The notes: generated by a model not told the origin, from the sequence alone. A stretch of DNA of 64,000 nt from IMGVR_UViG_3300046694_000296:124001-188000; one strand, 5' to 3'. Positions 15,918 to 63,324 are shown, numbered from the stretch's first letter. Program-made: numbers and translations.

Positions 15918-16409
15918 ATGGCTGAGTTCAAGGTGACGCGCCGGTTTGCAGAGCATCGAGGTGGCACGAAGGCGTATCAGATTTTCGAAGTGCAGTGCGA
16001 AACGAACGTCGCCATCGTTCTCCAATACGGCAAGTTCAGCACCGGCTCGGACCCCGTGTCGATGGGTGGCTCAGTCAGCATCGAGGGCGTCTATGGGCAA
16101 CGGCAGGCGCGGGGCGTCGCCGATCGCAAGCAGACCGAGAAGATGCGACGTGGCTATGACGGATGGACCGAAGACACGTTCACGGCCGCCGACGAAGCCT
16201 CGTTCAAGGACGTGCTCAAGAAGCTGTGGGGCGACCGTAAGGCCGAGCAGGTTTTCGCTCGCGTCTCAAAGGGCATGGTGACTGCCTCGACCGACCCGCA
16301 ACCATCCGAACCCCCGCCAGAAGTCGATCCCGAAAATGATGATGAGGGCGACACGAAAGCGCCCGTAATCGAAATCGAACAATCCTCGCCCGAATGGGGC
16401 AGCTGGTAG
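15918..16409 (+). CDS. WGR-like domain protein with C-terminal GSW tag
   Basis: KAYQI...QYGK...EKMRRGY resembles the WGR domain; acidic tail ending SPEWGSW. Confidence 0.6.
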   Translation: MAEFKVTRRFAEHRGGTKAYQIFEVQCETNVAIVLQYGKFSTGSDPVSMGGSVSIEGVYGQRQARGVADRKQTEKMRRGYDGWTEDTFTAADEASFKDVLKKLWGDRKAEQVFARVSKGMVTASTDPQPSEPPPEVDPENDDEGDTKAPVIEIEQSSPEWGSW

Positions 16410-22883: not shown

Positions 22884-23551
22884 GATCCGAATGCTCCCAG
22901 ATAGGTGTCTTTCATCTCGTTCGCGGCAGCGGCATCCCACCACTCGCCGGTCAGCTCGGTGACGCCCTTGCCTTGCGCCAAGGCGAACTTGTAGCTCTCG
23001 CGCGAGGCGATCAGATGCTTCATGAGGGGTAGCCGATCCTTGAACGCCTCCATCTGCTTGAGCATGGATTTGGTCATGCGCTTGCGCTTGTCGGCCTGAT
23101 TGAGCACGACCCGCACGTCAATCTTCTTGGTGTATGTGCCGAGAAGCTCGTGGAGATCAGGCACGGTGTCGAGATCCGCCGGCGACGGGATGAGCGGCGC
23201 GATGACCTTCTCTGCCACTGCCAGCCCGTAGCGAAACCCGTCCGAGTCCTTGCCGCCGACGTCGATGAACACGTCGTCATACTCGTCGACCAGGCGGCCA
23301 AGAATGTCAGCGAACTCCTCTTCCGTCAGGCGCTTCTCTCGCGGCCAACGCTCAACGTGGACCTGGGACAACTCGGGATGCTCCGCGCGGCGCAAGGCCC
23401 ACTTTGTCGTGGTGCCCTGCCCGTCCAGATCGAATACCGCGACACGTCGGTCGAGAGATGCGCGGATAACGACCAAGTTTTGCGTAATGGTTGATTTGCC
23501 GACACCACCCTTCTCTGTTCCCACCATAAATACGTCCTTGATTACGGACAT
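22880..23551 (-). CDS. parA: ParA family partition ATPase (type Ib)
   Basis: KGGVGKST deviant Walker A, DLDGQ and IDVGG motifs. Confidence 0.92.
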   Translation of the reverse strand: MSVIKDVFMVGTEKGGVGKSTITQNLVVIRASLDRRVAVFDLDGQGTTTKWALRRAEHPELSQVHVERWPREKRLTEEEFADILGRLVDEYDDVFIDVGGKDSDGFRYGLAVAEKVIAPLIPSPADLDTVPDLHELLGTYTKKIDVRVVLNQADKRKRMTKSMLKQMEAFKDRLPLMKHLIASRESYKFALAQGKGVTELTGEWWDAAAANEMKDTYLGAFGS

Positions 23552-24862: not shown

Positions 24863-27202
24863 ATGAAAGTTAACAACCGCGTCCTGGTCATGCGTGAGGC
24901 AATCACGAAGATCGTGCCGATGTTAACTCAACGCTCGGTGAAGGTAACGCAGCAAGGCACGCAAGCGTTCGTCGAGTATCACGGGACGACGCTGGAAGTT
25001 AAGCGCGTGAACCTGCCGTATATCCCCGAAGACGCCAGCGACCAGCTGCTCGACGCGACGCAGGGCTTCCTCGACCACGAGGTCGGCCACGTTCTGTTCA
25101 CGGAGCAGAAGTTCGTCAAGAAGGCCGCGAAGCTCCAGGTGCACTCGCTGCACAACATGATCGAGGACACCTTCGTCGAGCGGAAGATGGGCGAGAAATT
25201 CCCCGGTTGCGGATCGAACCTGACCCGCATGCACGGTTTCTTCCTGACCGAGTGGATCGACACGCAGCTCAAGGAGAAGCCCGAGCATGCCGCCGCGATT
25301 CTGATGGTCTGCGCGATTCGTGCATGGGCGGGCCAGCCCGCCTTCGTCGGCTACATGAAAGACAAGTGGTCGATGATGGAAGACGTCGTGAACCGGCTCG
25401 GTGCCGACTTCCCGAAGATGATCCGGGGCGTCAACAGCAGCGAAGCGGGCCTGAAGGTCGCGATCGAAGCGAAGAAGCGTCTCACGCCGAAGCCGCAACC
25501 GAAAGCACCGACGCCGCCGACGCCTCCGCAGCCGGCACCGCCCGAGCCGCCGAAAGCTGAAGAGCCGCAGCCGTCCGACGACGAGAACGCGAAGAACGGC
25601 GCGGAGCAAAGCAGCGGCGAGTCGCACGATGACGCCGACGACAAAGAGCCGCAGCAACCGAACGATATGCCCAACCTCACCGACGAGGAGCCCGAGCAGA
25701 GCGCATCCAGCGCCCCGCAGCCGGAGGGTGACGACGAGGACGAGGACGAGCTCGACGACGCTGAAGGTGAGGAAGATCGGGAGCCGGAAGGTGAGCCCGA
25801 ACAGGAGCAGCCCGCACCTGCGCCGGGCGACGAAGAGGACGACGACGCAGAGGATACCGAGAGCCCGCTGGACGTCAACGAGCCGGACGACGACCTCGAC
25901 GACGAGGACGAGGACACCAGCACCGAGCAGGACGACGAGGGTGACAACGCGGGCGGTGGCATGTCGGGCGAAGAGGCCGACAACGACCATGACGTCGGCG
26001 ACGAAGAGGGCGCACCGAGCGGTGGCGGCGACGGTCTGCCCGGTGGCGAAGAGTCGGGCGACACCGCCGAGAGCGATGCGGGCGACGCGGGCGGCCAGGA
26101 CGAGAACGGAGCGGGCCAGCAAGACGCGGGCGACGAAGAGGGGCACGGCACGCCCGAAGCAGGCGAGGGCGATCAGCCGATCGAGCGCGATCCGAACGAC
26201 GATCGCGACTTCTTCAAGGAGTTCGAAGACGCTGACGTGAAGGAGTTCGACGAGGCGGCCGCCGAAGCACTCTCGAAACAAGCGGTCGAGGCTGCGCGCG
26301 GTGCGGACTACATCGTGTTCACCCGCGACGAGGACGTCCTCGAAGTGCTGGACGTGCCCGATGCGTTCGGGCAGGAGGAAGTCACCCGAATGCAGAGCAA
26401 GGTGGACCACATGATCGGGCCGCTGCAGAAAGATTTGCAGCGCGCTATCGCGGCGCGTTCTGCAGCAATCTGGACGGGCGGGCACCGGCGCGGCCAGCTG
26501 CACGGCGCATCACTCGCCCGCGTGCTCACCGGCCGCGACGACGTGTTCAGGCAGAAGCAGGTGTCCCGCACGAAGGACGTCGCGGTGTCGCTCCTCGTCG
26601 ATGCGTCCGGCTCGATGTGGGAGCACGACAAGATTCGCGTCGCCACTTATGCCGCGTATGCGCTCTCGGCGGTGCTCGACAACATCGGCATCACCAACGA
26701 GGTGCTCGCCTTCAGCACGAAGGAGCTGAGCTTCCCGGCAATGTCGGCGATGCACAAAGAGGCAAGCGAGCACGGCCTCAAATACTCGCGGGGCGCCGCG
26801 CTCGATATGCGCATCCTGAAGTCCTACGCCGAGCGCATGACGCCGCTCGTGCGCCGACGCTTCGCGTTGCTCGCGGGTGCTAACGCAATGCTGCAAGAGA
26901 ACGTCGATGGCGAGAGCGTGCAGATCGCGAATCACCGTCTCCAGCAGCAGCGCGCGACGCGCAAGGTGATGATGGTGCTCTCGGATGGGATGCCTGCGTG
27001 CGATGGGCGTCGCAGCCCGGTCCTCGCGTCGCACCTGAAAGAGGTAGTGCGACAGATCGAAAAGCGCGGCACCGACGTCGTAGCGCTCGGCATTCTCGAC
27101 CCTTCGGTGAAACAGTTCTACGACCGCGCGCTGGTCCTCAATTCGGTGGCAGAGCTGCCCGGCGTCGTGATGAAGGAGCTGCACCGACTCCTCGTGCAGT
27201 GA
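24863..27202 (+). CDS. CobT-like VWA-domain protein with a long acidic linker
   Basis: N-terminal DHEVGH metallopeptidase-like motif; C-terminal MIDAS DASGSM...SDGMP; adjacent to a CobS-like ATPase. Confidence 0.85.
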   Translation: MKVNNRVLVMREAITKIVPMLTQRSVKVTQQGTQAFVEYHGTTLEVKRVNLPYIPEDASDQLLDATQGFLDHEVGHVLFTEQKFVKKAAKLQVHSLHNMIEDTFVERKMGEKFPGCGSNLTRMHGFFLTEWIDTQLKEKPEHAAAILMVCAIRAWAGQPAFVGYMKDKWSMMEDVVNRLGADFPKMIRGVNSSEAGLKVAIEAKKRLTPKPQPKAPTPPTPPQPAPPEPPKAEEPQPSDDENAKNGAEQSSGESHDDADDKEPQQPNDMPNLTDEEPEQSASSAPQPEGDDEDEDELDDAEGEEDREPEGEPEQEQPAPAPGDEEDDDAEDTESPLDVNEPDDDLDDEDEDTSTEQDDEGDNAGGGMSGEEADNDHDVGDEEGAPSGGGDGLPGGEESGDTAESDAGDAGGQDENGAGQQDAGDEEGHGTPEAGEGDQPIERDPNDDRDFFKEFEDADVKEFDEAAAEALSKQAVEAARGADYIVFTRDEDVLEVLDVPDAFGQEEVTRMQSKVDHMIGPLQKDLQRAIAARSAAIWTGGHRRGQLHGASLARVLTGRDDVFRQKQVSRTKDVAVSLLVDASGSMWEHDKIRVATYAAYALSAVLDNIGITNEVLAFSTKELSFPAMSAMHKEASEHGLKYSRGAALDMRILKSYAERMTPLVRRRFALLAGANAMLQENVDGESVQIANHRLQQQRATRKVMMVLSDGMPACDGRRSPVLASHLKEVVRQIEKRGTDVVALGILDPSVKQFYDRALVLNSVAELPGVVMKELHRLLVQ

Positions 27203-27242
27203 GGCGTTTACGCCACGCGGGCAAATCTGCCTGCATAGGATA

Positions 27243-27284
27243 GTAAGCGGTGACTTGACGCGTCCGTGAGTAACCGCTTACTAT
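27243..27284 (+). promoter_or_regulatory. Promoter with two operators (cobS-like operon)
   Basis: GTAAGCGGTGAC, TTGACG (-35), GTAACCGCTTAC, TACTAT. Confidence 0.7.
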
Positions 27285-27339
27285 TTCACCTGTAGCGAAT
27301 GCAAACCAATTTCAATTTTTCTCTGCATCGGAGGATTCA

Positions 27340-28551
27340 ATGAGCGATACCGGCGACAAGATCACTTGCCAGGAGTGCGGCGCGCTAACCCACGCGATTC
27401 AGCTCCACCTGCCGGATGCCCACCCGGGCATGACTCTCGCCGACTATCAGGCGAAATACCCCGAAGCACCGATCCTCTCCAAGCGCGCTCAAGCTGAACT
27501 CGAACGCCAGCGCGCAGCAAAAGCTGCCGCAGCTGCACCCGTGACCGCCGCGATGGCGGGCGGTGCTGTGCCCGCTAATGTGATCGCGCTGAACCCCGAA
27601 GGCAAGACGACCGCCACGCTGCACGACACGTTCGGCTTGCTCGACGGTCACGGTAAGCCGGTGCCCGCAGCGCTCAATTCGCGCAAGGGTCCGATCGAAA
27701 TCACCGTGTTCGCCTCGCCGCGTGACGCCGATATGGTGCCGGCGATCGACCCCGGCTTCATCTTCGATATCGAAAACCTGCGCAACGCGATCATGGCGCT
27801 CGAACTCCGCAAGAACCTCTACGTGTGGGGTCACGCCGGAACGGGCAAGACGACGCTCATCGAACAGATCATGGCGCGCACCGGGCGGCCGGTGATTCGC
27901 GTGCAGCACTCGATCGGCACCGAAGAGTCGCACGTCCTCGGTCAGTGGGTGGTGCGCGGCGGTCAGACCGAGTTTCAACCGGGCCTGCTCCCGCTCGCGA
28001 TGCGCAACGGCTGGACCTACCTCGCCGACGAATACGACTTCGGTAACCCCGCGGTCCTCGCCGTGTATCAACCGATCCTCGAACCGGGCAAGAGCCTCGT
28101 CATCAAGGACGCACCCGACGAGTGGCGTGTGGTGAAACCGCACGAGAACTTCCGCTTCGTCGCAACGGGCAACACGAACGGTTCCGGTGACGACACGGGC
28201 CTCTATCAAGGCACGCAGATTCAGAACGCCGCGAACTATGACCGTTTCGGCATGGTGCTCGAGGCGACCTACATGCAGCCGGAGCTCGAGTCGGCGATTC
28301 TGGTGCAGCGCAGCCGGATTCAGAAGAAGAACGCCGATCAGCTGGTGGACTTCGCGAACCGCGTGCGCGAAGCCTATAAGAACAAGGAGATCGCGAGCAC
28401 CATCTCGCCGCGATGCCTGATCGACGCGGCCGACATCGGTCTGCGACGCGCGAACTGGCGCTTGGGCGTGACGCTCTCCTTCATCAACAAGCTCTCTGCG
28501 GTGGACCGCGCTGTCGTTGACGGCGTTGCATCGCGAATTCTCGACAAGTAA
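27340..28551 (+). CDS. CobS-like MoxR AAA+ ATPase with an N-terminal C2H2-like finger
   Basis: GHAGTGKT, LADEYD, ATGNTNG and DRF motifs; N-terminal CQEC...H...H. Confidence 0.88.
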   Translation: MSDTGDKITCQECGALTHAIQLHLPDAHPGMTLADYQAKYPEAPILSKRAQAELERQRAAKAAAAAPVTAAMAGGAVPANVIALNPEGKTTATLHDTFGLLDGHGKPVPAALNSRKGPIEITVFASPRDADMVPAIDPGFIFDIENLRNAIMALELRKNLYVWGHAGTGKTTLIEQIMARTGRPVIRVQHSIGTEESHVLGQWVVRGGQTEFQPGLLPLAMRNGWTYLADEYDFGNPAVLAVYQPILEPGKSLVIKDAPDEWRVVKPHENFRFVATGNTNGSGDDTGLYQGTQIQNAANYDRFGMVLEATYMQPELESAILVQRSRIQKKNADQLVDFANRVREAYKNKEIASTISPRCLIDAADIGLRRANWRLGVTLSFINKLSAVDRAVVDGVASRILDK

Positions 28552-29215: not shown

Positions 29216-29829
29216 TGAGCCACCCGAGCTGCTTCGGGCTGCCGTCGGTGTTCACCGCGAGCACGCAGACCTGCACGGCGTGCGCCTCGCGCAGCGAATG
29301 CGTGAGCGCCTGCTATTCGATGCTCGTCTCGCTCTCGGACAAGATCGACGTGACGGCCCCGCTCGCGCAGCTAGAGCGCACGGCCCGCGTCGTGACCGCG
29401 CAGTCGATACCCGCGCACGCGGTCGCAACGACGATCGCGGCGCCCGCGCCCGCCGCAGTGCAGGTGAACCTGGCGCACGGTGAGCGCGAGCATGACCTTC
29501 TTACGAGCCTGCCTGTGCGGGTGCAAAAGGTGATGCGCCCGCTTCTCAAGCGCGGCGGGGATGCCCGCGCACGCCTTGCGCTCGCGAAAGGGCAGAACCC
29601 CTTCGACGGGCGCGGCCCGCAGTGGTTGCGCCTTGCCGGTGAAAAGCTCCTCGCCGGCAGCTTCACCAAGGGCGAGCTGCGGCACGCCTACATCAACGAA
29701 TACGGCTGGTCGGAGTCGACCGCCTTCTCGCGCGTGTCCATCGTCGTGTCGGTGATTCCGGCGTTGCGTCTGGGCCGCGTCAGGGGCGACACGGTGCTTC
29801 GTGCGCCGACGCTCGCCCGGGATCATTGA
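29215..29829 (+). CDS. Hypothetical protein with a Cys cluster
   Basis: PSCFG...CTAC...ECVSAC; TGATG coupling. Confidence 0.7.
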   Translation: MSHPSCFGLPSVFTASTQTCTACASRSECVSACYSMLVSLSDKIDVTAPLAQLERTARVVTAQSIPAHAVATTIAAPAPAAVQVNLAHGEREHDLLTSLPVRVQKVMRPLLKRGGDARARLALAKGQNPFDGRGPQWLRLAGEKLLAGSFTKGELRHAYINEYGWSESTAFSRVSIVVSVIPALRLGRVRGDTVLRAPTLARDH

Positions 29830-29860
29830 AGCATCAACCCATTCACCGCAGGAGCTCAAG

Positions 29861-32800
29861 TTGAATATCAAGCACCTCCTGTCCGCGCGCAGCGATTTCT
29901 CGCTCGGGGAGTCCACCTTGCAGGTCGGCACCCTGATCGACACCGCGAAGGCGCAGGGCTATGAGACGGTCGCCCTCGTGGACAACATGACCATCTCCAA
30001 CATGGTCGCGTTCACCGACAAGGCGAAGAAAGCGGGGATCAAGCCGATCGTGGGCTGCACGATTCGCATGGTCGACGATCCGACCTACCGCAAGCCGCCG
30101 AAGGCGTCGGGTGAGGTCGAGCGTCCGAACCCGCTCGTCATGCTCAAGGTCTACGCCAAGACCGACGCGGGCCTGCGCAGCCTCATGAAGCTGCTCTCCA
30201 AGGGAAACAGCCCGGAATACTTCTACTACCACTCGCGCGTGGGCCTCGAGGACGTGCTGCAGCTGGAGGAGTGCGCGGTGAGCACGGGCGACTTCTATGG
30301 CCTGTTCCATCACAAGCGCTGGGAGGAGATCGCATACCGGCTAAGCGAAAAGTTCGGCCGCGACTTCTGCGTCGAATTCGTGCCCGGCGGCACGCCGCTG
30401 CACAAGACGCTCAACAAGCTCGCGCTCCTTTGCCACGACCGCTTCATTTCGACGCCGATCGGCACCTGGCCCGCGCTCTATGCGACCGACGATCAAGCCG
30501 ACAGCCTCGACGTGCTGCGCGCGATTCTCGGCAACAACAAGATGACCGACAGGTGGCTCAACAAGCCCTACCTGCGCAACTTCTCGATCCGCGCGCCGGG
30601 CGATCTGGTGCGCGCGCTCGTCGCGGAAGGCTTGCCCGCGAAGGAGATCATCAACGGCAACCAGGCGCTTGTCGATTCGTGCACGTTCGAATTCAAGAAG
30701 CTCGAGCCGTGTCTGCCGAAGATGGCCGACGACGAGTTTCTGGCGCTGGTCGAGCAGGTCAAGAAAGGCTGGGCGCAGCGCTTCGCCGCGCCCGTGCTCG
30801 GGCATCAGCCCGCGCCCGAAGAGCTGCCGCAATACAAAGCGCGCCTCGCTTACGAACTGGACGTGCTGCGCAAGATGGGCTTCTCGGGCTACTTCCTGCT
30901 GGTGCAGCACATCGTGCAGTGGAGCAAGCAAAACGGCATTCTGGTCGGCCCCGGCCGCGGTTCGGTAGGTGGGAGCCTCGTCGCCTATCTGATGGGAATC
31001 ACTGACGTCGATCCGATCCGCTTCAACCTGCTGTTCGAGCGTTTCATCAATCCTGAGCGTCTTGACTTGCCCGACGCCGACCTCGACTTTATGTCCAAGC
31101 GCCGGCATGAGGTGATCGACTACATCGCCGAGCACTTCGGGCGCGAGAACGTCGCGGGCGTGTCCAACTACAACACGATGGGCGCCGCGGGCGTGATGCG
31201 CGATACCTCGCGCGTGCACGAACTCAACCCGTTCGACTACGCCTGCTCGAAGCAGATGGAAAAGCAGCACGGGGTTTCCCTCTCGCTGGAAGAGTCCGCT
31301 GCGATCGTGCCGGAGATCGACAAGTTCAAGGGCCAGTTTGCCGGCATCTGGAAGCATATGGTCAACCTCGAAGGCGCGGCGCGCGGGCTCGGGCAGCACG
31401 CCGCCGGTGTGATCGTCGCGGGTGAGCCGATCATCAACCGCGCCGTGGTCGAGACACGCACCGGCGGGCCGGTGTGCAATTGGGACAAGCGCACGGTCGA
31501 GGACTTCGGGCTCATCAAGATGGACATCTTGGGCCTGACCAACCTCGACGTGATGAAGCTCGCGGCCGACTACATCAAGGAGCGACACGGCAAGTCGATC
31601 GACTTCCTGCGTCTGCCGCTCGATGACAAGAAGGTGATGGAGGCATTCGGGCGGGGCGACACCACGGGCGTGTTCCAGTTCGAGTCGCCCGGCATGCGTC
31701 GGTTGCTGCGCGAGATGGCGCTCGCGGGTCCGGTGACCTTCGACGACCTCGTGGCGGTGGTCGCGCTCTATCGTCCGGGTCCGCTCGACGCGGGTCTGTG
31801 CGACGACTACGTGGCGATCAAGCAAGGGTCCAAGCAACCCTACTACGAGCACCCGAACATGGCGCCCGCGCTGAAGGACACCTACGGGGTGATCGTGTAT
31901 CAGGAGCAGGTGATGCAGATCGCGCGGGACTTGGCGGGCTTCACGATGGCCGGCGCCGACCACCTGCGTAAAGCGATGGGCAAGAAGGACAAGGAGAAGA
32001 TGGCCGAGATGCGCCAGAAGTGGGTCGATGGCTGTATGACGCACTCAGGCATGTCCGAAGGCACGGCGCACGCGCTCTTTGACAAGATCGAAGTGTTCGC
32101 CGGCTACGCCTTCAACAAGTCGCACTCGGTGGAATATGCGGTGATTTCATTCTGGACGATGTGGCTCAAGTGCTACTACCCGGCCGAATACTTCGCCGCC
32201 TCGCTCACCGAAATCGACAAAGAAGAGAAGCGCGAACCGCTCGTGCAGGACGCGCGGCGCATGGGCATGCAGGTCTTGCCACCCGACATCAACCATTCGA
32301 GCGCACGGGTAGAGATCGTGGGCGAGGACAAGCTCTACGCCCCGTTCCAGGCGCTCAAGGGTCTGTCCGAGAAGGCTGCGGGCTACATCGTCGATGCGCG
32401 CAACAAGTGGGGCAAGCCCTTTGCCAACCGCACCGACCTCGACGCGGCACTGAAGGCGGCGGAATACTCGGGCCGGCACATCAACCAGAGCGTGAAGGAC
32501 AAGCTGGTGCTCATTGGTGCCTTCGCCGAGTGCGAGGGCGACAAGGTGCCCGCCATGCACCCCGATCGGCTGAAAAACCGCATCGAGCTTCTGCCAGGTT
32601 TCACGGTCGATACTGTGAAAGCTGATCGAACGCTCAACGCTGAGCACCTTGCCTTGCTGCAACTGGTGCGCATCGGTGAGGAGACGCGCTCATGCGAGAA
32701 GTGTTCGCTCAAGGGCGGCTGTCACCCGATGCCGCGCATCGGTAAGACGCCGAAGTTCATGGTGGTGTCCGACAACCCGAACTGGCAGGAGGAGAAGGCG

Positions 32801-33205
32801 GGCAAGCTGCTCGAAGGCGACAACGCGAAGCTCGTCATCAACGCACTGAAGGAAGCGGGGCTCTCGGCGCAGGACGGCTATTTCACCACGCTGGTGAAGT
32901 CGGGCAAGCCGAAGGAGCAGAAGACGCTCACCAACGAGCAGATAAATGCGTGTAGCCAATATCTGCAGCGTGAGCTTGAAGTCCTCAAGCCACCAGTCAT
33001 CGTAACGCTCGGCTCAAATGCCGCCCGTTTCTTCGCGCCGACTGTAAAGGGTGGATCAATGGAGTTGGCTGGGAAAGTTATCTTCGATCCAAAGCGCGAT
33101 GCGTCGATTGTGTTCGGGATCAATCCGGGTCAAATCTTCCACGATCCGGGCAAGTATGCGGTCCTTCAGACGGTGGCAGCAAAAGTAGCTGATTTGGTCA
33201 GTTGA
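29861..33205 (+). CDS. dnaE: DNA polymerase III alpha (DnaE) with a C-terminal uracil-DNA-glycosylase-family domain
   Basis: PHP domain, GRGSVGGS, PDADLDF, KMDILGL, GVFQFES and FNKSHS motifs; C-terminus CEKCSL...FMVVSDNP...C..YL.RE...KP..IVTLG. Confidence 0.93.
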   Translation: MNIKHLLSARSDFSLGESTLQVGTLIDTAKAQGYETVALVDNMTISNMVAFTDKAKKAGIKPIVGCTIRMVDDPTYRKPPKASGEVERPNPLVMLKVYAKTDAGLRSLMKLLSKGNSPEYFYYHSRVGLEDVLQLEECAVSTGDFYGLFHHKRWEEIAYRLSEKFGRDFCVEFVPGGTPLHKTLNKLALLCHDRFISTPIGTWPALYATDDQADSLDVLRAILGNNKMTDRWLNKPYLRNFSIRAPGDLVRALVAEGLPAKEIINGNQALVDSCTFEFKKLEPCLPKMADDEFLALVEQVKKGWAQRFAAPVLGHQPAPEELPQYKARLAYELDVLRKMGFSGYFLLVQHIVQWSKQNGILVGPGRGSVGGSLVAYLMGITDVDPIRFNLLFERFINPERLDLPDADLDFMSKRRHEVIDYIAEHFGRENVAGVSNYNTMGAAGVMRDTSRVHELNPFDYACSKQMEKQHGVSLSLEESAAIVPEIDKFKGQFAGIWKHMVNLEGAARGLGQHAAGVIVAGEPIINRAVVETRTGGPVCNWDKRTVEDFGLIKMDILGLTNLDVMKLAADYIKERHGKSIDFLRLPLDDKKVMEAFGRGDTTGVFQFESPGMRRLLREMALAGPVTFDDLVAVVALYRPGPLDAGLCDDYVAIKQGSKQPYYEHPNMAPALKDTYGVIVYQEQVMQIARDLAGFTMAGADHLRKAMGKKDKEKMAEMRQKWVDGCMTHSGMSEGTAHALFDKIEVFAGYAFNKSHSVEYAVISFWTMWLKCYYPAEYFAASLTEIDKEEKREPLVQDARRMGMQVLPPDINHSSARVEIVGEDKLYAPFQALKGLSEKAAGYIVDARNKWGKPFANRTDLDAALKAAEYSGRHINQSVKDKLVLIGAFAECEGDKVPAMHPDRLKNRIELLPGFTVDTVKADRTLNAEHLALLQLVRIGEETRSCEKCSLKGGCHPMPRIGKTPKFMVVSDNPNWQEEKAGKLLEGDNAKLVINALKEAGLSAQDGYFTTLVKSGKPKEQKTLTNEQINACSQYLQRELEVLKPPVIVTLGSNAARFFAPTVKGGSMELAGKVIFDPKRDASIVFGINPGQIFHDPGKYAVLQTVAAKVADLVS

Positions 33206-34568: not shown

Positions 34569-35576
34569 ATGTCTACTGCTCAACTGATGGAACTGCTTGC
34601 GAAGCGCAAGGCTGCAACGGGCGGCGCAAAAACGATCAAGCCGAAGGCTGGTCGCAACCGCTACCGCATCCTCCCGGGCTGGCGCACCAACGGCGACCCG
34701 ACGTTCTTCCACGACTTCGGTCAGCACTTCATCAAGGACGCAGCGGGTCAGGTGAAGGCAGTCTACATCTGTGCGGACAAGACCTTCGGTCGTCCGTGCG
34801 AGGTGTGCGACGCGGTGGCACAAGGCATCGCCGCATCGACCGATGACGTGACGAAAAAGCGCATCGAGGAAGCGAAGTCGAGCGGCCGCGTGTTGCTCAA
34901 CGTCCTCGAGCTCGACGGCACGCAGCCGACGGTGCCGCAGATCCTCGAAGTCGCGCCCTCGGTGTTCAACGGCAAGAAGGGCGTCGGCGGCATCATCGCG
35001 CTGTTCGACGAATGGCCCAACATGCTCGATCCGAACACCGGCCACGACATCATCGTCGAGAAGTCGGGCTCGGGCCTCGACACCGCCTACAGCGTGCAGA
35101 TCGCGGGCTCCTCGAAGCCGGTCCCAGCCGAAGCGCTCACGAAGCTGGTTGACCTCGACGCCTACGTGATGCAGGAAAACGCGCAAGCGCAGCAGCGTGC
35201 ACTCGCCTCGGTTCGCGCCGTCGCAGGTCTGCCTGCTCCGACGCAGACCTACGCACCGGCAGCCCTGCCGCCGGGCGCAGCGAACGCCTACACCGCGCAA
35301 GAGCCGGCACCGTGGGAAGCCGACGACACGCTCGACATCGGCTCGTTGTCGAACCCGGTAGCGGCCGCAGCAGTGGCCCAGCCGGTCGCAGCACCGGCAC
35401 CGGCACCGGCGGCGCCCGCAGCAACCGTGGAAGTCGCAGCAGCGGTCGCAGCGGTTGCTACGCAGCCGGTCGCAGCAGCCGCTCCCGCAGCGGTGGCCCA
35501 GCCCGTAGCCGCAGCCGCCCCGGCAGCAGCAGGCACGGGTGACCCGGAGCTCGACGCTCTGCTCGCGGGCCTGTAA
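34569..35576 (+). CDS. Single-stranded DNA-binding protein (gp32-like)
   Basis: RYRILP, H..C...C..C Zn site, DPNTGHDI motif, flexible tail ending ELDALLAGL. Confidence 0.7.
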   Translation: MSTAQLMELLAKRKAATGGAKTIKPKAGRNRYRILPGWRTNGDPTFFHDFGQHFIKDAAGQVKAVYICADKTFGRPCEVCDAVAQGIAASTDDVTKKRIEEAKSSGRVLLNVLELDGTQPTVPQILEVAPSVFNGKKGVGGIIALFDEWPNMLDPNTGHDIIVEKSGSGLDTAYSVQIAGSSKPVPAEALTKLVDLDAYVMQENAQAQQRALASVRAVAGLPAPTQTYAPAALPPGAANAYTAQEPAPWEADDTLDIGSLSNPVAAAAVAQPVAAPAPAPAAPAATVEVAAAVAAVATQPVAAAAPAAVAQPVAAAAPAAAGTGDPELDALLAGL

Positions 35577-41443: not shown

Positions 41444-43405
41444 ATGGAGATTCTTAAACTACGAGCGGTCAACTTCCTGACGCTCGGTGACTCGGGCGAC
41501 CTGCTGCTCAAGGACCGCGGTTTGGTCCTGATTCAAGGCGTCAACAACGACGACCCGTCCGCGATCTCGAACGGTGCGGGCAAGAGCTCCATCGCCGACG
41601 CGCTGTGCTGGGCGCTTTACGGCACCACCGCACGCGAAGAGTCGGGCGATTCCGTCATCAACAAGAAGGCGAAGAAGGGCACCTACGTGTCGGTGATCCT
41701 GCAAGACGGCGAGACGGTTTACGACATTCGCCGCCACCGCAAGGACAAGCAGTTCAAGAACGCGACCACGATCACGCGCTGGAACCCGGCCGCCGAGTAT
41801 GAGAACGGTGCGCAGGGCGAGCGCATCGAGAAGGGCACCGAGAAGGAGATCCAGCTGCAGATCAATGAGATCGTCGGCTGCAACTACGACGTGTTCAAGT
41901 CGGCCATCTACGCCGGCCAGGAGGATATGCCCGACCTGCCGAAGATGACCGACAAGCCGCTCAAGATGCTCATCGAGAAGGCGTCGGGCATCGAACGACT
42001 GGAGTCGGCCTACACGATTGCGAACCGTAAGCACGACGAGGCAAAGGCGGCGGTCGAATCGGTCAACACGAAGATCGCGCTGCTGGAGAACCAGATCGTC
42101 AACTGGAAAGTGTCGCTCGCGAACGCCGAGGTCAAGCACAAGGAGTTCGAGGACAACCGCCCGGTCACGCAGCAATACTTCCTGAAGGAAGCTGAGACGA
42201 TCGCCGCGTGTCTGAAAGACAACTTCGCGAAGTTCCAGGCGGTCGGCGAGGCTGCACTGATCGAGGAGCGCGACAAGCTGCAAGCGATCCTCGCAGATCA
42301 CAGCAAGTTCACGACCGAAGCACGCGCGCTGCATGGCGTCGCGGTGCAGGCCGAATCAAGCCTCGCTGCGTGGAACCGCAGCTATGAAATGCAGCGGGCC
42401 GACATGTTGCGCGCGGTGGAAGCCGTGAAGAATGCCCCCGCAGCGATGGCGAAGCCCTGCACCGAATGTGGCAAGCCGCATACCGCCGAAGAGCTGGACG
42501 AGTTCGTCGCACACCAGACCAAGCGCGCGAAGGAGTTGGCAGCGCAGGTAGCGACGGTTCAGGCGACGGTGACCGAGCATCAGAACGACCACGCCGCGAA
42601 GCTGCGCGCGTATGAGGATTTCCTGAAGACGATTCCCGACGTGTCGGCTACGAGCACGCGGCTCGCCGAGGTCAACAAGAGCCTCGCCTACGCGGCCGCC
42701 CTGCGCAGCGCCGTGCAGCGCGACAAGCAGAACTACGACCGCATGAAGGAAGAGGCGGCGAAGGCGCTCACGACCGTCAACCCGCACCAGTCCGCGATCG
42801 ACTTGGGCCGGGAGAACGTGGGCAAGTGCGAGCAGGCGATCGACAAGCTCAAGGCTGACGCGGCCGAGCTCATCAAGGCGGTCGAAGTCGCGGCGAGCGT
42901 CGCGAAGGTGTTCAGCCCCGGTGGCGTGCGTGCGCAGATCCTCGATACGGTCACGCCGTTCCTGAACGATCGCACCAGCGACTACCTGTCGGCGCTCTCC
43001 GACGGGAACATCAGCGCCGTGTGGTCGACACTGAGCACGACCGCGAAGGGCGAGCTCCGCGAGAAATTCAACATCGAGGTCGAGAACGCCACCGGTGCTG
43101 AGTCGTTCGGTGGTCTGTCGGGCGGGGAAAAGCGCAAGGTCAGGCTCGCGACGATGCTCGCGCTGCAAGACTTGGTGGCCTCCCGCGCGACCAAGCCGAT
43201 CAACCTGTGGCTCGGCGACGAGATTGACGATGCGCTCGACGCAGCGGGCCTCGAACGGCTCATGACCGTGCTGGAGCAGAAGGCGCGCGAGAAGGGAACC
43301 GTGCTGATTATCAGCCACGAAAGCCTCGCCGATTGGGTGGATCAGGTCTGCACCGTCACGAAGGAAGGCGGGCAATCGACCGTGACCGGAGCGCTCTGCG
43401 CATGA
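41444..43405 (+). CDS. SbcC/Rad50-like ATPase
   Basis: NGAGKS, CTEC zinc hook, LSGGE signature, DE and ISH motifs. Confidence 0.92.
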   Translation: MEILKLRAVNFLTLGDSGDLLLKDRGLVLIQGVNNDDPSAISNGAGKSSIADALCWALYGTTAREESGDSVINKKAKKGTYVSVILQDGETVYDIRRHRKDKQFKNATTITRWNPAAEYENGAQGERIEKGTEKEIQLQINEIVGCNYDVFKSAIYAGQEDMPDLPKMTDKPLKMLIEKASGIERLESAYTIANRKHDEAKAAVESVNTKIALLENQIVNWKVSLANAEVKHKEFEDNRPVTQQYFLKEAETIAACLKDNFAKFQAVGEAALIEERDKLQAILADHSKFTTEARALHGVAVQAESSLAAWNRSYEMQRADMLRAVEAVKNAPAAMAKPCTECGKPHTAEELDEFVAHQTKRAKELAAQVATVQATVTEHQNDHAAKLRAYEDFLKTIPDVSATSTRLAEVNKSLAYAAALRSAVQRDKQNYDRMKEEAAKALTTVNPHQSAIDLGRENVGKCEQAIDKLKADAAELIKAVEVAASVAKVFSPGGVRAQILDTVTPFLNDRTSDYLSALSDGNISAVWSTLSTTAKGELREKFNIEVENATGAESFGGLSGGEKRKVRLATMLALQDLVASRATKPINLWLGDEIDDALDAAGLERLMTVLEQKAREKGTVLIISHESLADWVDQVCTVTKEGGQSTVTGALCA

Positions 43406-43920
43406 GCGCGCGAAACAAGAAGTCCAGCGTGCTCGACGACCTTGTGGCGAGCGCCACCCAGTTCACACGATATGAGGAGAATCGAAGCATGACACTCGAT
43501 GCCAAGCAGAAGGCAGCAGACGAGATAGCCGCACGCATTAACAGCGGGCTGCGCGGACACGGACGCACGTCGTTCAAGCTCACCGGCCCGGCGCAACTGA
43601 CCATCAAGACGCGCCAGTCGCAATACAAGAAGAAGGCATTCTTGGGCGACGAGGAGATGGCGCTCACCAGCGCATACGCGGGCAAGCGCGGCGACGTGAT
43701 CGCGGTGTTCAAGAACAACGTGCCGACCGAATACGCCTACATCGAAATTCCGCTGATGGAAGCGCGCGAGCGACTGAGTGGCTTTTCAGATTTCATTGCG
43801 GCGCTCAACATCGAGGACTTCGACAAGATCGTCGATGGCATCGAGCAGGGTATCGCGCAGGCAGCCGCCGTCGAGCGCGAAGAGGCAATGGCAGAATCCC
43901 CCGAGTTTGGTAGCTGGTAA
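43402..43920 (+). CDS. Hypothetical protein with C-terminal GSW tag
   Basis: Ends ESPEFGSW; alternative start 43489 with GAGGAG RBS. Confidence 0.7.
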   Translation: MSARNKKSSVLDDLVASATQFTRYEENRSMTLDAKQKAADEIAARINSGLRGHGRTSFKLTGPAQLTIKTRQSQYKKKAFLGDEEMALTSAYAGKRGDVIAVFKNNVPTEYAYIEIPLMEARERLSGFSDFIAALNIEDFDKIVDGIEQGIAQAAAVEREEAMAESPEFGSW

Positions 43921-60815: not shown

Positions 60816-61225
60816 GCGACGGCGAGGCATTGCGGCGCGAATTGAAGGCGGGCGATCAAATCATCGCGACGGATATCGCCTTTTTCAGACACGCGCCGGA
60901 TAAGCAATCGCAGCACATTGGCGATCTGCTGATGGTCAACAACCCGCGTATCGGCGACGCTGTTGGCGGTGTGTCGCTGAACAACCGGCCGGGCGAGTCG
61001 AGCCGAATCGGGCTAGGCAGCTCGCTGGTGGTCGGCAAGTTTCGTCGAGCAACACCCGACGACCCCGGCTACTTGGCAACCCGCGAGCAGTGGTTCGCCA
61101 TCAAGAACTTGGAGATCGAGAAGCTGCAAGCTCGGCTATGGGCGAAGGGAGTGGATTTTTGGGCCGTTCTCTCAGTCGCAGTTTTGCTGGCTGTTTGTCT
61201 GGTCACGAAAGGCAGTGTCCAATGA
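60812..61225 (+). CDS. Hypothetical protein with C-terminal TM
   Basis: GTGA coupling; hydrophobic C-terminus. Confidence 0.55.
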   Translation: MSDGEALRRELKAGDQIIATDIAFFRHAPDKQSQHIGDLLMVNNPRIGDAVGGVSLNNRPGESSRIGLGSSLVVGKFRRATPDDPGYLATREQWFAIKNLEIEKLQARLWAKGVDFWAVLSVAVLLAVCLVTKGSVQ

Positions 61226-61572
61226 GACTCCTAATCTGCGGCGGCCGAGACTTTGAGAACCTGCCGTGGGCATTCGAGAAGCTCGATGCGTTCCGGCGGG
61301 CCAATGCGGTCACGGTGGTGATCCACGGTGATGCGCGAGGTGCCGACACCATCGGGGGAAAATGGGCTGACACGCGCGGGATACCGGTCGAAAAGTATCC
61401 CGCCGACTGGGCCCGCCTCCGCAACGCAGCGGGGCCGGCTCGCAACGCGCAGATGCTCCGCGAGGGCAAGCCCGATCACGTGTTCGTGCTGCCGGGAGGA
61501 CGGGGCACTGCGAACATGGTCATTCAGGCAAAGGAGGCGGGCGTGCCGATTACGTTCGCGAAGGGATTATGA
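61222..61572 (+). CDS. YspA/SLOG-family (DUF2493-like) protein
   Basis: LLICGGRDF, IHGDARGAD, ADW...AGPARN..M and PGGRGT..M motifs. Confidence 0.85.
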   Translation: MRLLICGGRDFENLPWAFEKLDAFRRANAVTVVIHGDARGADTIGGKWADTRGIPVEKYPADWARLRNAAGPARNAQMLREGKPDHVFVLPGGRGTANMVIQAKEAGVPITFAKGL

Positions 61573-61745
61573 GCCTCAAGCACGAGAACGATCCAGTGAT
61601 GAACATCATCGCGCCGGAGGACATTCCGACCGAGTGCGTGCACAACGGATGCGGCGCGCGCACGACGCTCATCGAAACACACGCCAACTACACGCACGAG
61701 GAATGCGTCATGTGCGGGCAGCAGTATCACGTCTATCAGGACTGA
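61569..61745 (+). CDS. Small zinc-ribbon protein (58 aa, absent from the ORF track)
   Basis: Hand translation MSLKHENDPVMNIIAPEDIPTECVHNGCGARTTLIETHANYTHEECVMCGQQYHVYQD; ATGA coupling; fills the gap exactly. Confidence 0.7.
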   Translation: MSLKHENDPVMNIIAPEDIPTECVHNGCGARTTLIETHANYTHEECVMCGQQYHVYQD

Positions 61746-61748
61746 ACC

Positions 61749-62234
61749 ATGAGCAAGGACAAGACCGCCTACGTGAGCCGCGAAGGGCATCGACTCCAGA
61801 GGGTCGAGTGGCAACGCCTGCGTGCCGACAACGCCTACCGCACGGTTCGGGCGTTCGAGAACGACACGATTGGCGTGACCGCCGAGTGGGTGGGTATCGG
61901 CCAGAATCCGCAGACCGTGCCGCCCCAGCACTGGAAGCTCTACCGCCTGACGGTCGAGAACATCGTGCGCGCCGACGCAGAAGGGAATCCGCTGCCGGTG
62001 CCGCGCCGCACGGTCGATCCAAGCCTCACGCGCGACTTTCGCACCGAGCAGGAAGCGATCGACGCCTACGAAGACGCACTGGTGCGTTTCGGTGGTTGTG
62101 AGTGGTTGCCCGCGCCCGACGGCGCGACTGGCCCGCTCTTTGTCGAGCACGGCAACAAGTTGCAGGTGGGCGAAAGCAAGATCGACGTGCGCGAGCTGGC
62201 CGATGACGTCGCGGACCTCGCCGGGAGCTGGTGA
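61749..62234 (+). CDS. Hypothetical protein with C-terminal GSW tag
   Basis: Ends DVADLAGSW. Confidence 0.75.
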   Translation: MSKDKTAYVSREGHRLQRVEWQRLRADNAYRTVRAFENDTIGVTAEWVGIGQNPQTVPPQHWKLYRLTVENIVRADAEGNPLPVPRRTVDPSLTRDFRTEQEAIDAYEDALVRFGGCEWLPAPDGATGPLFVEHGNKLQVGESKIDVRELADDVADLAGSW

Positions 62235-62482
62235 TGACGGAATGCGATGAAGTCGCCGAAGGGATGCGCGACGATTTTCTCGGCTGGATTCGCGCCGAAG
62301 AGCGCGAGTTGTCGCACTACGCGGCGCGCAGATTCGTGACCGCGCAGATGCCCGACGAGACACCGACGATCCGCGATGACGTGTCCTTGAGCCTCTTCGC
62401 CATCGCGCGGGTGCATGTGCACGACCACACGATGCGCCAGAAGATCGCTGAGATGGACAGTCCGATGGCCGGGAGTTGGTGA
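62234..62482 (+). CDS. GSW-tag paralog 1
   Basis: TGATG coupling; ends DSPMAGSW. Confidence 0.75.
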   Translation: MTECDEVAEGMRDDFLGWIRAEERELSHYAARRFVTAQMPDETPTIRDDVSLSLFAIARVHVHDHTMRQKIAEMDSPMAGSW

Positions 62483-62742
62483 TGGCACGGGATCGCAGCG
62501 GGGAAGCCCGGCGGTGGGTGCCGTCGTTCGCACAGTGGCTCGTCGAGAACAAGATGGAGCTCGATGGGTATGCCGCCTACATCTATGCGCGCAAGGTCGT
62601 CGTGCCGGATAGCGGCCGTCAATACCAGAAAGAGATCGGCGTGGCACTGCTCAAGCTGGCGCAGCAGGAATACGAAGTCGAGGCTCAGAAGCGAGAGCGC
62701 GACGAGGAGATGGCGAGCAACCCATTGGCCGGGAGTTGGTGA
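62482..62742 (+). CDS. GSW-tag paralog 2
   Basis: TGATG coupling; ends SNPLAGSW. Confidence 0.75.
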   Translation: MARDRSGEARRWVPSFAQWLVENKMELDGYAAYIYARKVVVPDSGRQYQKEIGVALLKLAQQEYEVEAQKRERDEEMASNPLAGSW

Positions 62743-63011
62743 TGGCAGAAGCCTCAAGAATCACTGCCGCGAACATGCTTCATGATTTCATGCGCTGGCT
62801 CGCGAAGGAAGGCTATGTGGTGGACGCCCTCGCGGCGCGCGAGTTCGTTGCCAAGCGACTACCGCACCAGTCCATCGACTATCGCATGAGCGTCGTCCAC
62901 AAGCTGCTCGAACTGGCGGAACGGGAAGCGAAGAAGGCGCGCGAGCAGCACGAGGCATCGCCGCCTCAAGATGAAGATTCAGCCGGCAGCCCATTGGCGG
63001 GTAGCTGGTAA
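62742..63011 (+). CDS. GSW-tag paralog 3
   Basis: TGATG coupling; ends GSPLAGSW. Confidence 0.75.
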   Translation: MAEASRITAANMLHDFMRWLAKEGYVVDALAAREFVAKRLPHQSIDYRMSVVHKLLELAEREAKKAREQHEASPPQDEDSAGSPLAGSW

Positions 63012-63038
63012 CGGTTTGTCCATGAGTGGTTGGTTTTC

Positions 63039-63066
63039 AGGGGCGCCTTTGGGCGCCTCTTTTTTT
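63039..63066 (+). terminator. Rho-independent terminator
   Basis: AGGGGCGCC-loop-GGCGCCTCT followed by a T-tract. Confidence 0.8.
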
Positions 63067-63324
63067 GCCTCCAGCGCGCAGCCAAGCCTCGCGTGCTATT
63101 CGCGCGCCCGCACGCATTCCCTGTTAGCAAAAACGCATCCGAGATGCGAGTGCCGGGGCCAAAGACCCGTCTTTAAAGTCTCTCTTGTCGCGACGCACTA
63201 AGCGACGCGAGACAGGGAAGGGCAAAACGGTCCAGCACCATGCGATACGCGCCTTCTCCCGGTCGTGAAAATTGAAACCAGCGCGAACACAGCGCAAACC
63301 AATCTCACTCAGGAGAAATACGCC

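What the first reader, a model, noticed from the sequence alone, without database searches (positions are those of the whole stretch)
61749..63011. Tandem cassette-like array of GSW-tagged genes joined by a repeat that is at once tag, RBS, stop and start
Seen: the junction GCCGGGAG(C/T)TGGTGATG recurs at about 62220, 62468 and 62728 (the last two share TGGCCGGGAGTTGGTGATGGCA), with a terminal variant CCATTGGCGGGTAGCTGGTAA at 62991. It encodes A-G-S-W-stop, supplies a GGGAG Shine-Dalgarno and overlaps the next ATG (TGATG). The last three ORFs are diverged paralogs (DDFLGWIRAEERELSHYAARRFV / PSFAQWLVENKMELDGYAAYIYA / HDFMRWLAKEGYVVDALAAREFV), and the array ends at a strong terminator. Inference: a modular, expandable array in which recombination at the junction could add or swap variable bodies onto a constant tag, such as diversified anti-defence or host-takeover adaptors.
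Basis: partly seen in the sequence, partly recalled or inferred. Interest (0 to 1): 0.78.

Follow-up and report, generated by a model that had tools for sequence, protein, structure and literature searches.

The report
Shared GSW tail on phage proteins
Four neighbouring phage genes end in the same short tail (…A-G-S-W), and this tail is a tag found across a whole group of ~110-kb phages, on 5–16 otherwise unrelated proteins per genome; it is probably a docking peptide for one partner that is still unknown.

Summary
Four head-to-tail genes (61749-63011) all end in AGSW. Three junctions share GCCGGGAGYTGGTGATG (0 expected by chance), and a strong terminator follows.

The tail is selected at the protein level. 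Genes with no overlapping downstream start keep AGSW but lose the Shine-Dalgarno and change the stop codon. One relative even uses a TCC serine codon.

The tail is not specific to the array. Two dispersed genes in the replication and recombination modules carry …SPEWGSW and …SPEFGSW. Of 148 distant relatives of the first array gene, 138 end in W.

Cultured relatives carry their own versions on 7-16 proteins:
- Stenotrophomonas phage ANB28: YGxW
- Pseudomonas phage nickie: FGxWA
- Rhizobium phage RHEph10: NPxFGRF

These tailed proteins include BRCT, WGR and dCMP-deaminase proteins.

Array content differs among relatives, from 1 to about 10 tailed genes, and the breakpoints lie at the junction.

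Best reading: the tail is a disordered acidic C-terminal docking motif for one common, unidentified receptor. Its codons have secondarily been used for translational coupling and as short recombination repeats.

It fits no known motif (β-clamp, SSB tail, ssrA). I rate it a new variant of a known kind, of fairly high interest.

The parts
61222..61572 (+). SLOG/YspA-family gene upstream of the array (context marker)
   Evidence: PF10686 YAcAr, E 9e-19. The same family precedes the expanded array in L038 and the arrays in L002, L005, L006 and L008.
61569..61745 (+). 58-aa Cys-rich small gene directly before the array
   Evidence: ORF. Conserved at this position in copy A, L002 and L005.
61749..62234 (+). 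F1: the conserved first gene of the array, 161 aa, ends ...DLAGSW
   Evidence: 13 close homologs all end in AGSW. 233 clusters at 50% identity match the profile, and 138 of the 148 inspected end in W. AF2 model pLDDT 83.5, with a folded body (about residues 1-130) and a low-confidence tail (149-161, pLDDT <50). dN/dS 0.30 between the two copies in the record.
62220..62236 (+). Junction 1: GCC GGG AGC TGG TGA overlapping ATG (tail codons, GGGAG Shine-Dalgarno, stop, start)
62234..62482 (+). S2: small three-helix paralog, 82 aa, ends ...SPMAGSW
   Evidence: dN/dS 0.12 between copies A and B.
62468..62484 (+). Junction 2 (left copy of the 22-29-nt direct repeat flanking S3)
62482..62742 (+). S3: paralog, 86 aa, ends ...NPLAGSW; present here and in L001, absent in L006
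62728..62744 (+). Junction 3 (right copy of the direct repeat flanking S3)
62742..63011 (+). S4: paralog, 89 aa, ends ...SPLAGSW
   Evidence: AF2 model pLDDT 85: three helices (2-23, 29-39, 45-72), then a low-confidence acidic tail. Ortholog in L006.
62991..63011 (+). Terminal tail variant GCG GGT AGC TGG TAA: same peptide, no Shine-Dalgarno, no overlapping start
63039..63070 (+). Intrinsic terminator closing the array
   Evidence: Conserved after the different last gene of copy A and in L006.
15918..16409 (+). F3: dispersed tailed gene directly after the DnaG-like primase, 163 aa, ends ...SSPEWGSW (GGC AGC TGG TAG, with a separate downstream Shine-Dalgarno)
   Evidence: Orthologs in G004 and G005 end ...LPEWGTW. 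The last 13 residues are identical between copies A and B, although the bodies are only 40% identical.
43333..43920 (+). F4: dispersed tailed gene between the SbcC-like and RuvC-like genes, ends ...SPEFGSW (start codon uncertain)
   Evidence: Ortholog in G004 ends ...DPAFGSW. A RHEph10 homolog ends ...NPNFGRF.

Best explanation
...A-G-S-W-COOH is the local version of a C-terminal short linear motif, roughly (acidic, disordered linker)-[N/S/D]-P-x-[F/Y/W/A]-G-x-[W/F]-COOH. The motif is characteristic of a clade of ~105-120-kb phages that encode a DnaE-type polymerase. It is attached to many unrelated protein bodies: 7-8 per ~108-kb genome copy here and 7-16 in cultured relatives. It most likely docks all of them onto one common receptor, in the way clamp-binding or PIP motifs tether many proteins to one hub. 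The tailed genes in conserved positions sit in the replication and recombination modules, and three tailed proteins of relatives carry WGR, BRCT or dCMP-deaminase domains. The receptor is therefore most likely part of the phage DNA-metabolism machinery (inferred). The array at 61749-63011 is a cluster of accessory tailed genes: one conserved first gene (F1) followed by three paralogous three-helix proteins. Inside the array, the tail codons were fixed as GGG-AGY-TGG-TGA-TG, which also gives a Shine-Dalgarno and a stop/start overlap for translational coupling. The resulting 17-29-nt direct repeats are the points at which genes are lost, gained or replaced. Shown: the motif exists, is conserved at the protein level, is clade-wide and has lineage-specific versions; the array varies; the codon choice differs between overlapping and terminal tails. 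Inferred: the docking function, a single receptor, and recombination at the repeat.
For: Selection on the peptide: tails with no overlapping start use GGC/GGT/GGA, AGC/AGT/ACT and TAA/TAG, and L004 uses TCC for Ser, yet all keep G-[S/T]-W. Enrichment: 10 G[ST]W ends against 0.24 expected. With a loose pattern counted over all ORFs: 15, 16, 9, 8 and 6 tails against 1.8-2.9 expected in ANB28, nickie, RHEph10 and own copies B and A. Unrelated bodies: no BLASTP similarity among F1, S, F3, F4 or among the L038 array proteins once tails are removed. The tail is the most conserved part: all 13 close F1 homologs end in AGSW; 120 of 148 representatives end G-x-W and 138 of 148 end in W; F3 keeps its last 13 residues while its dN/dS is 0.78. 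One version per genome: AGSW/FGSW/WGSW here, YGxW in ANB28, FGxWA in nickie, NPxFGRF in RHEph10. A homologous or equally placed protein carries the local version: F4 and RHE_56287; the gene after the primase and the gene after SbcC in nickie. Flexible tail: pLDDT below or around 50 for the last 13-17 residues of F1 and S4, on well-folded bodies. Tailed proteins with Pfam hits: WGR (2.6e-15), BRCT twice, dCMP deaminase. Context: F3 follows the primase and F4 lies between SbcC and RuvC. Array variation at the junction.
Against: No receptor was identified and no binding was tested. The genome holds no recognisable sliding clamp (DnaN, gp45, PCNA families). The tail does not fit the β-clamp motif (PMC11139829). 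The bodies of the array proteins have no informative homolog or fold match, so their link to DNA metabolism rests on neighbours and on a few tailed proteins in other phages. In nickie, one more residue (A/S/G) usually follows the W or F, so a free carboxylate on the aromatic residue is not universal. My impression that F3 is WGR-like was not supported by profile comparison. Counts in related contigs are not phylogenetically independent.
Confidence: 0.55

Rival explanations
1. The tail is a C-terminal degron. A host or phage protease or adaptor recognises ...ΦG-x-W-COOH, so that a set of early and replication-phase proteins is removed on schedule.
For: The tail is exposed, disordered and at the very C-terminus, and is shared by unrelated proteins, as with ssrA-type tags. 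Many tailed genes are small genes in early-type regions.
Against: It does not resemble the known bacterial C-terminal degrons (ssrA ...LAA and others; my own knowledge). It sits on conserved core proteins and on an enzyme (dCMP deaminase), and it is the most conserved part of a 233-cluster family. That degree of conservation is unusual for a simple instability signal. No protease gene was seen near the tailed genes.
Confidence: 0.15
2. The tail is a packaging signal that loads proteins into the capsid or virion for co-injection. This would be analogous to the encapsulin cargo-loading peptides that bind HK97-fold shells, or to the C-terminal tryptophan of McdB that binds carboxysome shells.
For: Cargo peptides and McdB also use short C-terminal motifs with a hydrophobic or tryptophan anchor (PMC8359340).
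Against: The tailed genes lie in the replication, recombination and small-gene regions, not in the structural module. The tailed proteins include a dCMP deaminase and BRCT and WGR proteins, which are unlikely capsid cargo. No virion proteome was examined.
Confidence: 0.1
3. The shared peptide is a by-product of nucleotide-level constraints: a Shine-Dalgarno plus stop/start overlap repeated by duplication of the junction.
For: At internal junctions the same 17 nt encode the tail, the Shine-Dalgarno, the stop and the start. GGG is used at all 12 such junctions.
Against: Ten of the 12 tails without an overlapping start lose GGGAG, and most of these change the stop codon, yet all keep G-[S/T]-W. 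F3 and F4 have separate downstream Shine-Dalgarno sequences. L004 switches the Ser codon family. The same peptide logic appears with unrelated codons in ANB28, nickie, RHEph10 and L038.
Confidence: 0.02
4. The array is a site-specific cassette system (integron-like), with the junction acting as a recombination site for a dedicated recombinase.
For: Gene-sized units are present, absent or replaced exactly at the junction. The junction is a conserved 17-29-nt repeat.
Against: There is no inverted-repeat or attC-like structure at the junctions. No integrase gene was noted beside the array among the ORFs and called genes listed there. The units are coding sequences that overlap by one base, not promoterless cassettes with their own sites. 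Short-homology recombination by the phage RecA-like, SbcCD and RuvC genes is sufficient.
Confidence: 0.03

Closest known systems
β-clamp binding motif (CBM) and PCNA PIP-box: hub-docking short linear motifs
   Same: A short, often C-terminal peptide in a disordered, negatively charged context. It is shared by many unrelated DNA-metabolism proteins that compete for one pocket, and the free C-terminal carboxylate can contribute (PMC11139829).
   Different: The sequence does not fit Qφx[L/M][F/L] or Qφx[L/M]x[F/L]. There is no Gln, Gly is nearly invariant at -2, and the terminal residue is Trp, which weakens clamp binding when it replaces Phe. No clamp gene is recognisable in the phage.
Acidic C-terminal tails ending in an aromatic residue: bacterial SSB-Ct (...DDDIPF) and T7 gp2.5/gp4 (terminal Phe)
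   Same: A disordered acidic tail with a terminal aromatic residue is used for protein-protein contacts at the replisome (my own knowledge; Marintcheva 2006 is cited in PMC8359340).
   Different: In those systems one hub protein carries the tail and many partners have the pocket. Here many proteins carry the tail, which implies the reverse arrangement. The phage's own SSB-like protein (window 34569-35576) ends differently.
T4 gp45 clamp partners (gp43, gp33, gp55 C-terminal tails)
   Same: A phage-encoded hub that recruits several phage proteins through similar hydrophobic C-terminal tails (my own knowledge, not tested here).
   Different: No gp45-like or clamp-loader gene was detected. The motif sequences were not compared with any tool.
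McdB invariant C-terminal tryptophan; encapsulin cargo-loading peptides
   Same: A conserved C-terminal Trp or short hydrophobic motif on otherwise very divergent, partly disordered proteins is used to bind a shell (PMC8359340).
   Different: Different sequence context (McdB ends V/I-W-P-D). There is no microcompartment or encapsulin here, and the tailed proteins are DNA-metabolism and early-region proteins.
ssrA-type C-terminal degradation tags
   Same: A common C-terminal peptide on unrelated proteins.
   Different: Here the tail is genetically encoded on each gene rather than added during translation. There is no ...LAA-like ending, and the tail is conserved over a large family.
Integron gene-cassette arrays
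   Same: Tandem gene-sized units with a repeated boundary sequence, and content that varies among relatives.
   Different: No attC-like structure was found and no integrase was noted in the gene lists beside the array. The boundary lies inside coding sequence, and the units are translationally coupled.

Membership tests
β-clamp binding motif (CBM) | Sequence Qφx[L/M][F/L] or Qφx[L/M]x[F/L] (PMC11139829) | tested here: not met
   Tails read D-L-A-G-S-W, S-P-[LM]-A-G-S-W and S-P-E-[FW]-G-S-W. There is no Gln and no L/M at the required position, and Trp is disfavoured at the last position.
β-clamp binding motif (CBM) | Binds the hydrophobic pocket of DnaN | not testable with these tools
   No complex prediction or binding assay was available. 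The phage has no DnaN-family gene.
SSB C-terminal tip | Acidic tail ending D-D-D-I-P-F on an OB-fold SSB (my own knowledge) | tested here: not met
   The tails end G-[ST]-W. The carriers are not SSBs: F1 has an α+β fold and S4 is a three-helix domain. The phage protein matching phrog_1192 (SSB) ends ...ALLAGL.
ssrA-like degron | C-terminal ...(Y)ALAA/LAA recognised by ClpXP/SspB (my own knowledge) | tested here: not met
   No tail ends in AA or LAA. Proteolysis itself was not testable.
Integron cassette array | attC-type imperfect inverted repeats at cassette boundaries | tested here: not met
   No inverted repeats in 61700-63100.
Integron cassette array | An adjacent IntI integrase | not tested
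   No recombinase stood out among the ORFs and called genes listed around the array here or in L002-L008, but no integrase family search was run.
Translationally coupled operon (stop/start overlap with an internal Shine-Dalgarno) | A Shine-Dalgarno 5-9 nt upstream of a start codon that overlaps the preceding stop | tested here: met
   GGGAG lies 6 nt before the ATG of TGATG at 62234, 62482 and 62742. The rare GGG codon is used at 12 of 12 such junctions against 2 of 12 other tails. Expression itself was not tested.
Paralogous gene family (S2, S3, S4) | Profile-level similarity of the bodies, independent of the shared tail | tested here: met
   hhalign with the last 10 residues removed: probability 96% (S2-S4), 84% (S3-S4), 80% (S2-S3).
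Clade-wide C-terminal tail motif (defined here) | [F/Y/W/A/aliphatic]-G-x-[W/F] at or one residue from the C-terminus, enriched over internal frequency, on unrelated bodies, in one version per genome | tested here: met
   enrichment in five genomes; unrelated bodies; lineage-specific versions.
WGR-domain protein (for F3, window 15918-16409) | Match to Pfam PF05406, or to a protein that matches it | tested here: not met
   No Pfam hit for F3. hhalign of the F3 family against the RHEph10 WGR protein gives probability <1%. Only the position after the primase is shown to be shared (with nickie); I did not check the neighbours of the RHEph10 WGR gene.

The most novel reading that the evidence does not exclude
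The tail is the address label of a phage-encoded recruitment system that has not been described. One receptor, conserved in this clade, gathers up to about 16 proteins per genome at the phage's replication and repair site, and expandable arrays of small tailed genes act as exchangeable adaptors. These proteins include DNA-end sensors (WGR, BRCT) and nucleotide-metabolism enzymes. The receptor could be one of the unannotated conserved genes next to the primase or the polymerase. It could also be the CobS/CobT-like MoxR-VWA pair, whose role in phages is unexplained. Because each lineage has its own version of the tail, tail and receptor would be co-evolving.
Probability: 0.3. Interest if true: 0.85.

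Novelty: new variant of a known kind. Interest (0 to 1): 0.72.

Why it matters
A single easily recognised C-terminal peptide links 5-16 proteins of unknown function per genome in a large, poorly studied group of soil and plant-associated phages. This group has cultured members on Stenotrophomonas, Pseudomonas syringae and Rhizobium. If the tail is a docking motif, one pull-down with a synthetic peptide would identify the receptor. That would assign a common cellular context to hundreds of protein families that currently have no annotation (F1 alone has 233 clusters at 50% identity). It would also give a bacterial-virus example of a hub-and-motif network whose motif changes in concert between lineages. 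Finally, it shows how a functional peptide can be co-opted as a translational-coupling signal and as a recombination repeat that lets a gene array grow and shrink.

Tried and rejected
**Searches that found nothing**
- Pfam and PHROGs on F1, S2-S4, F3 and F4 gave no family.
- PDB sequence and profile searches gave nothing.
- ESM Atlas feature search gave no usable lead.
- blastn of the region against the phage and plasmid collections gave no match.
- Literature searches for a 'GSW motif' or for shared phage C-terminal motifs found nothing. Later searches gave only analogies.
- Pfam on ten tailed nickie proteins gave nothing.

**Fold searches**
- Foldseek of the F1 model found nothing significant in the PDB. 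In AlphaFold DB and BFVD it found only uncharacterised proteins, with one weak NTF2-family name.
- The S4 three-helix model gave only insignificant matches, to a ribosomal protein.

**Ideas rejected**
- A phage-encoded sliding clamp as receptor: DnaN, gp45 and PCNA families are all absent.
- F3 as a WGR protein: not supported by profile comparison.

**Checks that were uninformative or mostly chance**
- An exact-pattern scan of IMG/VR with the junction gave 55 stretches. Most were chance out-of-frame hits; only those in contigs whose CheckV completeness estimates imply ~108-110-kb genomes ended real tailed ORFs.
- Laying metagenome contigs on the array showed the phage in several rhizosphere samples, but the contigs were too fragmented to reveal cassette variants. 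One 36-nt joint near the S4 stop was left uninterpreted.

**Tool availability**

Full report
**1. The observation.** Window 61749-63011 holds four same-strand ORFs of 161, 82, 86 and 89 aa, and each ends in A-G-S-W-stop. The 17-mer GCCGGGAGYTGGTGATG occurs at 62220, 62468 and 62728 and nowhere else in the window, even with two mismatches; none is expected by chance. With the terminal variant at 62986-63014 these form one 29-nt direct-repeat family. At the three internal junctions GGGAG lies 6 nt before an ATG whose A is the last base of the TGA stop. A hairpin with a 9-bp stem followed by a T-run lies at 63039-63060. The description is correct in every point.

**2. Selection acts on the peptide.**
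- The last gene encodes the same A-G-S-W with GCG GGT AGC TGG TAA. It has no GGGAG and no overlapping start.
- Across the record and its close relatives, 12 of 12 tails followed by an overlapping start use GGG for Gly. Only 2 of 12 other tails do, and those two sit where a foreign gene has replaced the downstream paralogs. GGG supplies only 10% of Gly codons in confident genes.
- One relative (L004) encodes the Ser with TCC rather than AGY.
- The peptide is therefore the conserved object, and the Shine-Dalgarno is a codon choice made where a downstream gene needs it.
- F1 and S2 are under purifying selection between the two copies in the record (dN/dS 0.30 and 0.12).

**3. The tail is not confined to the array.**
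- The window lies in a 215,656-bp virus record. This record is a head-to-tail pair of two diverged ~108-kb genomes.
- Ten ORFs in the record end in GSW, against 0.24 expected.
- Besides the array, these are a 163-aa protein directly after the DnaG-like primase (window 15918-16409...SSPEWGSW) and a protein between the SbcC-like and RuvC-like genes (window 43333-43920...SPEFGSW). Both have different codons, different stop codons and a separate downstream Shine-Dalgarno.
- A further conserved protein outside the window ends ...RWGGW.
- With tails removed, F1, the S family, F3 and F4 share no detectable similarity.

**4. The tail is clade-wide and comes in lineage-specific versions.** By the PolIIIα-UDG protein, the nearest cultured phages are Rhizobium phages of the RHEph10 type, Pseudomonas phage nickie and Stenotrophomonas phage ANB28. 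They are 108-122 kb and 43-45% identical, and nickie has the same gene order. I fetched the whole genomes.
- ANB28 has nine consecutive small genes ending ...YG-x-W (the last ends ...DSIW), plus at least three dispersed genes with Φ-G-x-W ends. Two more, ending ...EQGSW and ...QKGDW, keep only G-x-W. Two array members are BRCT proteins, and the ...QKGDW gene is a dCMP-deaminase-domain protein.
- nickie has about 15 proteins ending ...[F/I/M/A]-G-x-[W/F] plus one extra A, S or G. These include the genes after the primase and after SbcC.
- RHEph10 has seven proteins ending ...NP-x-F-G-R-F or close variants. One is a WGR-domain protein and one is homologous to F4.
- A metagenomic relative (L038) has about ten tailed genes in 4.7 kb downstream of the same SLOG gene that precedes the array here. 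Its tails include EDGGSW, SDFGTW, NPEFGSW, DPEWGAW and EDLGTW.
- Even with a deliberately loose pattern counted over all ORFs, every genome is enriched: 15, 16, 9, 8 and 6 observed against 1.8-2.9 expected.
- A profile of F1 finds 233 clusters at 50% identity. Of 148 inspected, 120 end G-x-W and 138 end in W. Two of these were traced to their contigs: both have an RNase_T-type exonuclease gene just upstream, and one lies on a 107-kb contig.
- The general form is an acidic stretch, often N/S/D-P, one or two residues, an aromatic or small hydrophobic residue, Gly, any residue, then Trp or Phe at or next to the C-terminus.

**5. Structure.** AF2 models built from family alignments give well-folded bodies. 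F1 is an α+β domain (pLDDT 83.5) and S4 is a three-helix domain (pLDDT 85). In both, the last 13-17 residues have low confidence. This fits a flexible, exposed tail. Fold searches gave no function for either body.

**6. The array as a variable cluster.** F1 is constant, and what follows it differs among relatives:

| Source | Genes after F1 |
|---|---|
| Window and L001 | S2-S3-S4 |
| L006 | S2-S4 |
| L002 | S2 only |
| Copy A and L007 | S2, then an Adhesin_E-like secreted protein |
| L003 | a T4 Y07C-like gene, then an S paralog |
| L005 and L008 | a Y07C-like gene alone |
| L004 | two unrelated small genes |

- In each case the similarity breaks at TGGTGA(TG).
- S3 is flanked by 22-29-nt direct repeats. 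A crossover between them would give exactly the L006 arrangement.
- S2, S3 and S4 are paralogs even with the tail removed.
- The phage encodes RecA-like, SbcCD and RuvC functions. Nothing integron-like is present.
The breakpoint evidence is comparative, not mechanistic.

**7. What the tail does.**
- Four properties are the signature of a docking motif for a single receptor that co-evolves with it: many unrelated carriers, an exposed acidic tail with an aromatic anchor, one version per genome that changes in concert between lineages, and retention on homologous or equally placed core proteins. I put this at about 0.55.
- The location of the conserved tailed genes (after the primase, after SbcC) and the WGR, BRCT and dCMP-deaminase domains in relatives point to DNA replication, repair and nucleotide metabolism. 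This step is inferred.
- The receptor is unknown. No clamp family is detectable in the genome. The tail fails the published β-clamp motif definition, in which Trp at the last position weakens binding.
- Alternatives are a degron (0.15) and a virion-loading signal (0.10). A pure nucleotide-level by-product and a site-specific cassette system are essentially excluded.
- My early impression that F3 is WGR-like was not confirmed.

**8. Comparison with known systems, and novelty.**
- In logic the tail resembles clamp-binding and PIP motifs and the T4 gp45 partner tails.
- In chemistry it resembles the acidic tails with an aromatic end of SSB and T7 gp2.5.
- In its invariant C-terminal Trp it resembles McdB.
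- It is a member of none of these by sequence.
- I found no description of it in the searchable literature.
- I rate it a new variant of a known kind (a hub-docking C-terminal motif). What is unusual is the tandem arrays of tailed genes and the dual use of the tail codons.

**9. Source.** The record comes from rhizosphere metagenomes. S-family fragments occur in Caballeronia genomes, which suggests a host in the Burkholderiaceae.

Noticed in passing
whole record G000 (window = G000:C1:124001-188000): The 215,656-bp 'genome' is two diverged (~75-90% identical) ~108-kb phage genomes joined head to tail and closed by a 127-bp end overlap. A 105-kb monomer whose F1 and four-gene array match copy B (F1 99% identical) exists separately (L001). 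This is likely a co-assembly chimera of two co-occurring strains, or a heterodimeric concatemer.
   Followed up: partly
genome 75985-76377 (copy A, outside the window); L007 4595-4987; L009 8529-8921: A ~130-aa protein with a signal peptide replaces S3-S4 between the S2 stop and the shared terminator in copy A and L007; the L007 and L009 homologs hit Pfam Adhesin_E (PF16747). It looks like a typical moron insertion at the array's end.
   Followed up: partly
L009 (Caballeronia turbans contig FCOD02000003.1) 8001-8246: A bacterial chromosome carries an S2-like gene whose tail is broken (...SPMAGI), next to the Adhesin_E-like gene and a few kb from integrase, resolvase and ParB/RepB genes. A second fragment lies in Caballeronia sp. 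LZ029. This points to Caballeronia or its relatives as hosts.
   Followed up: partly
window 29801-33205: A DnaE-type PolIII α subunit is fused at its C-terminus to a uracil-DNA-glycosylase domain. The RHEph10 annotation notes the same fusion.
   Followed up: no
window 24863-28551: A CobT-like (VWA) and CobS-like (MoxR AAA+) gene pair lies in the replication module with no CobN seen beside it. The pair is conserved in nickie, and its role in phages is unexplained.
   Followed up: no
window 15918-16409 versus genome 31569-32045: The F3 body evolves fast between the two copies (40% identity, dN/dS 0.78), while its last 13 residues are identical.
   Followed up: partly
protein P0124: A 1,119-aa protein matches part of the F1 profile (positions ~99-136) in 12 separate stretches, so a segment of F1 seems to exist as a tandem repeat elsewhere.
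   Followed up: no
window 62971-63008: In one rhizosphere run (X5), a contig skips or replaces 36 nt just before the S4 stop. This would alter or remove the tail in a variant strain. The evidence is a single contig at relaxed identity.
   Followed up: no
window 19859-20328 (-) and 22880-23551 (-): A small gene pair that looks RelE/ParE-like by eye, and a ParA/MinD-like ATPase with a Walker-A start, lie between the ligase and the CobT gene. These are possible plasmid-like maintenance functions. They were read from ORF translations only.
   Followed up: no
L003 4474-4704, L005 4483-4713, L008 3925-4122: In three relatives, a T4 Y07C-family gene (PF26894) with no tail starts at the F1 TGATG junction in place of S2. 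The junction can therefore drive translation of an unrelated gene.
   Followed up: partly
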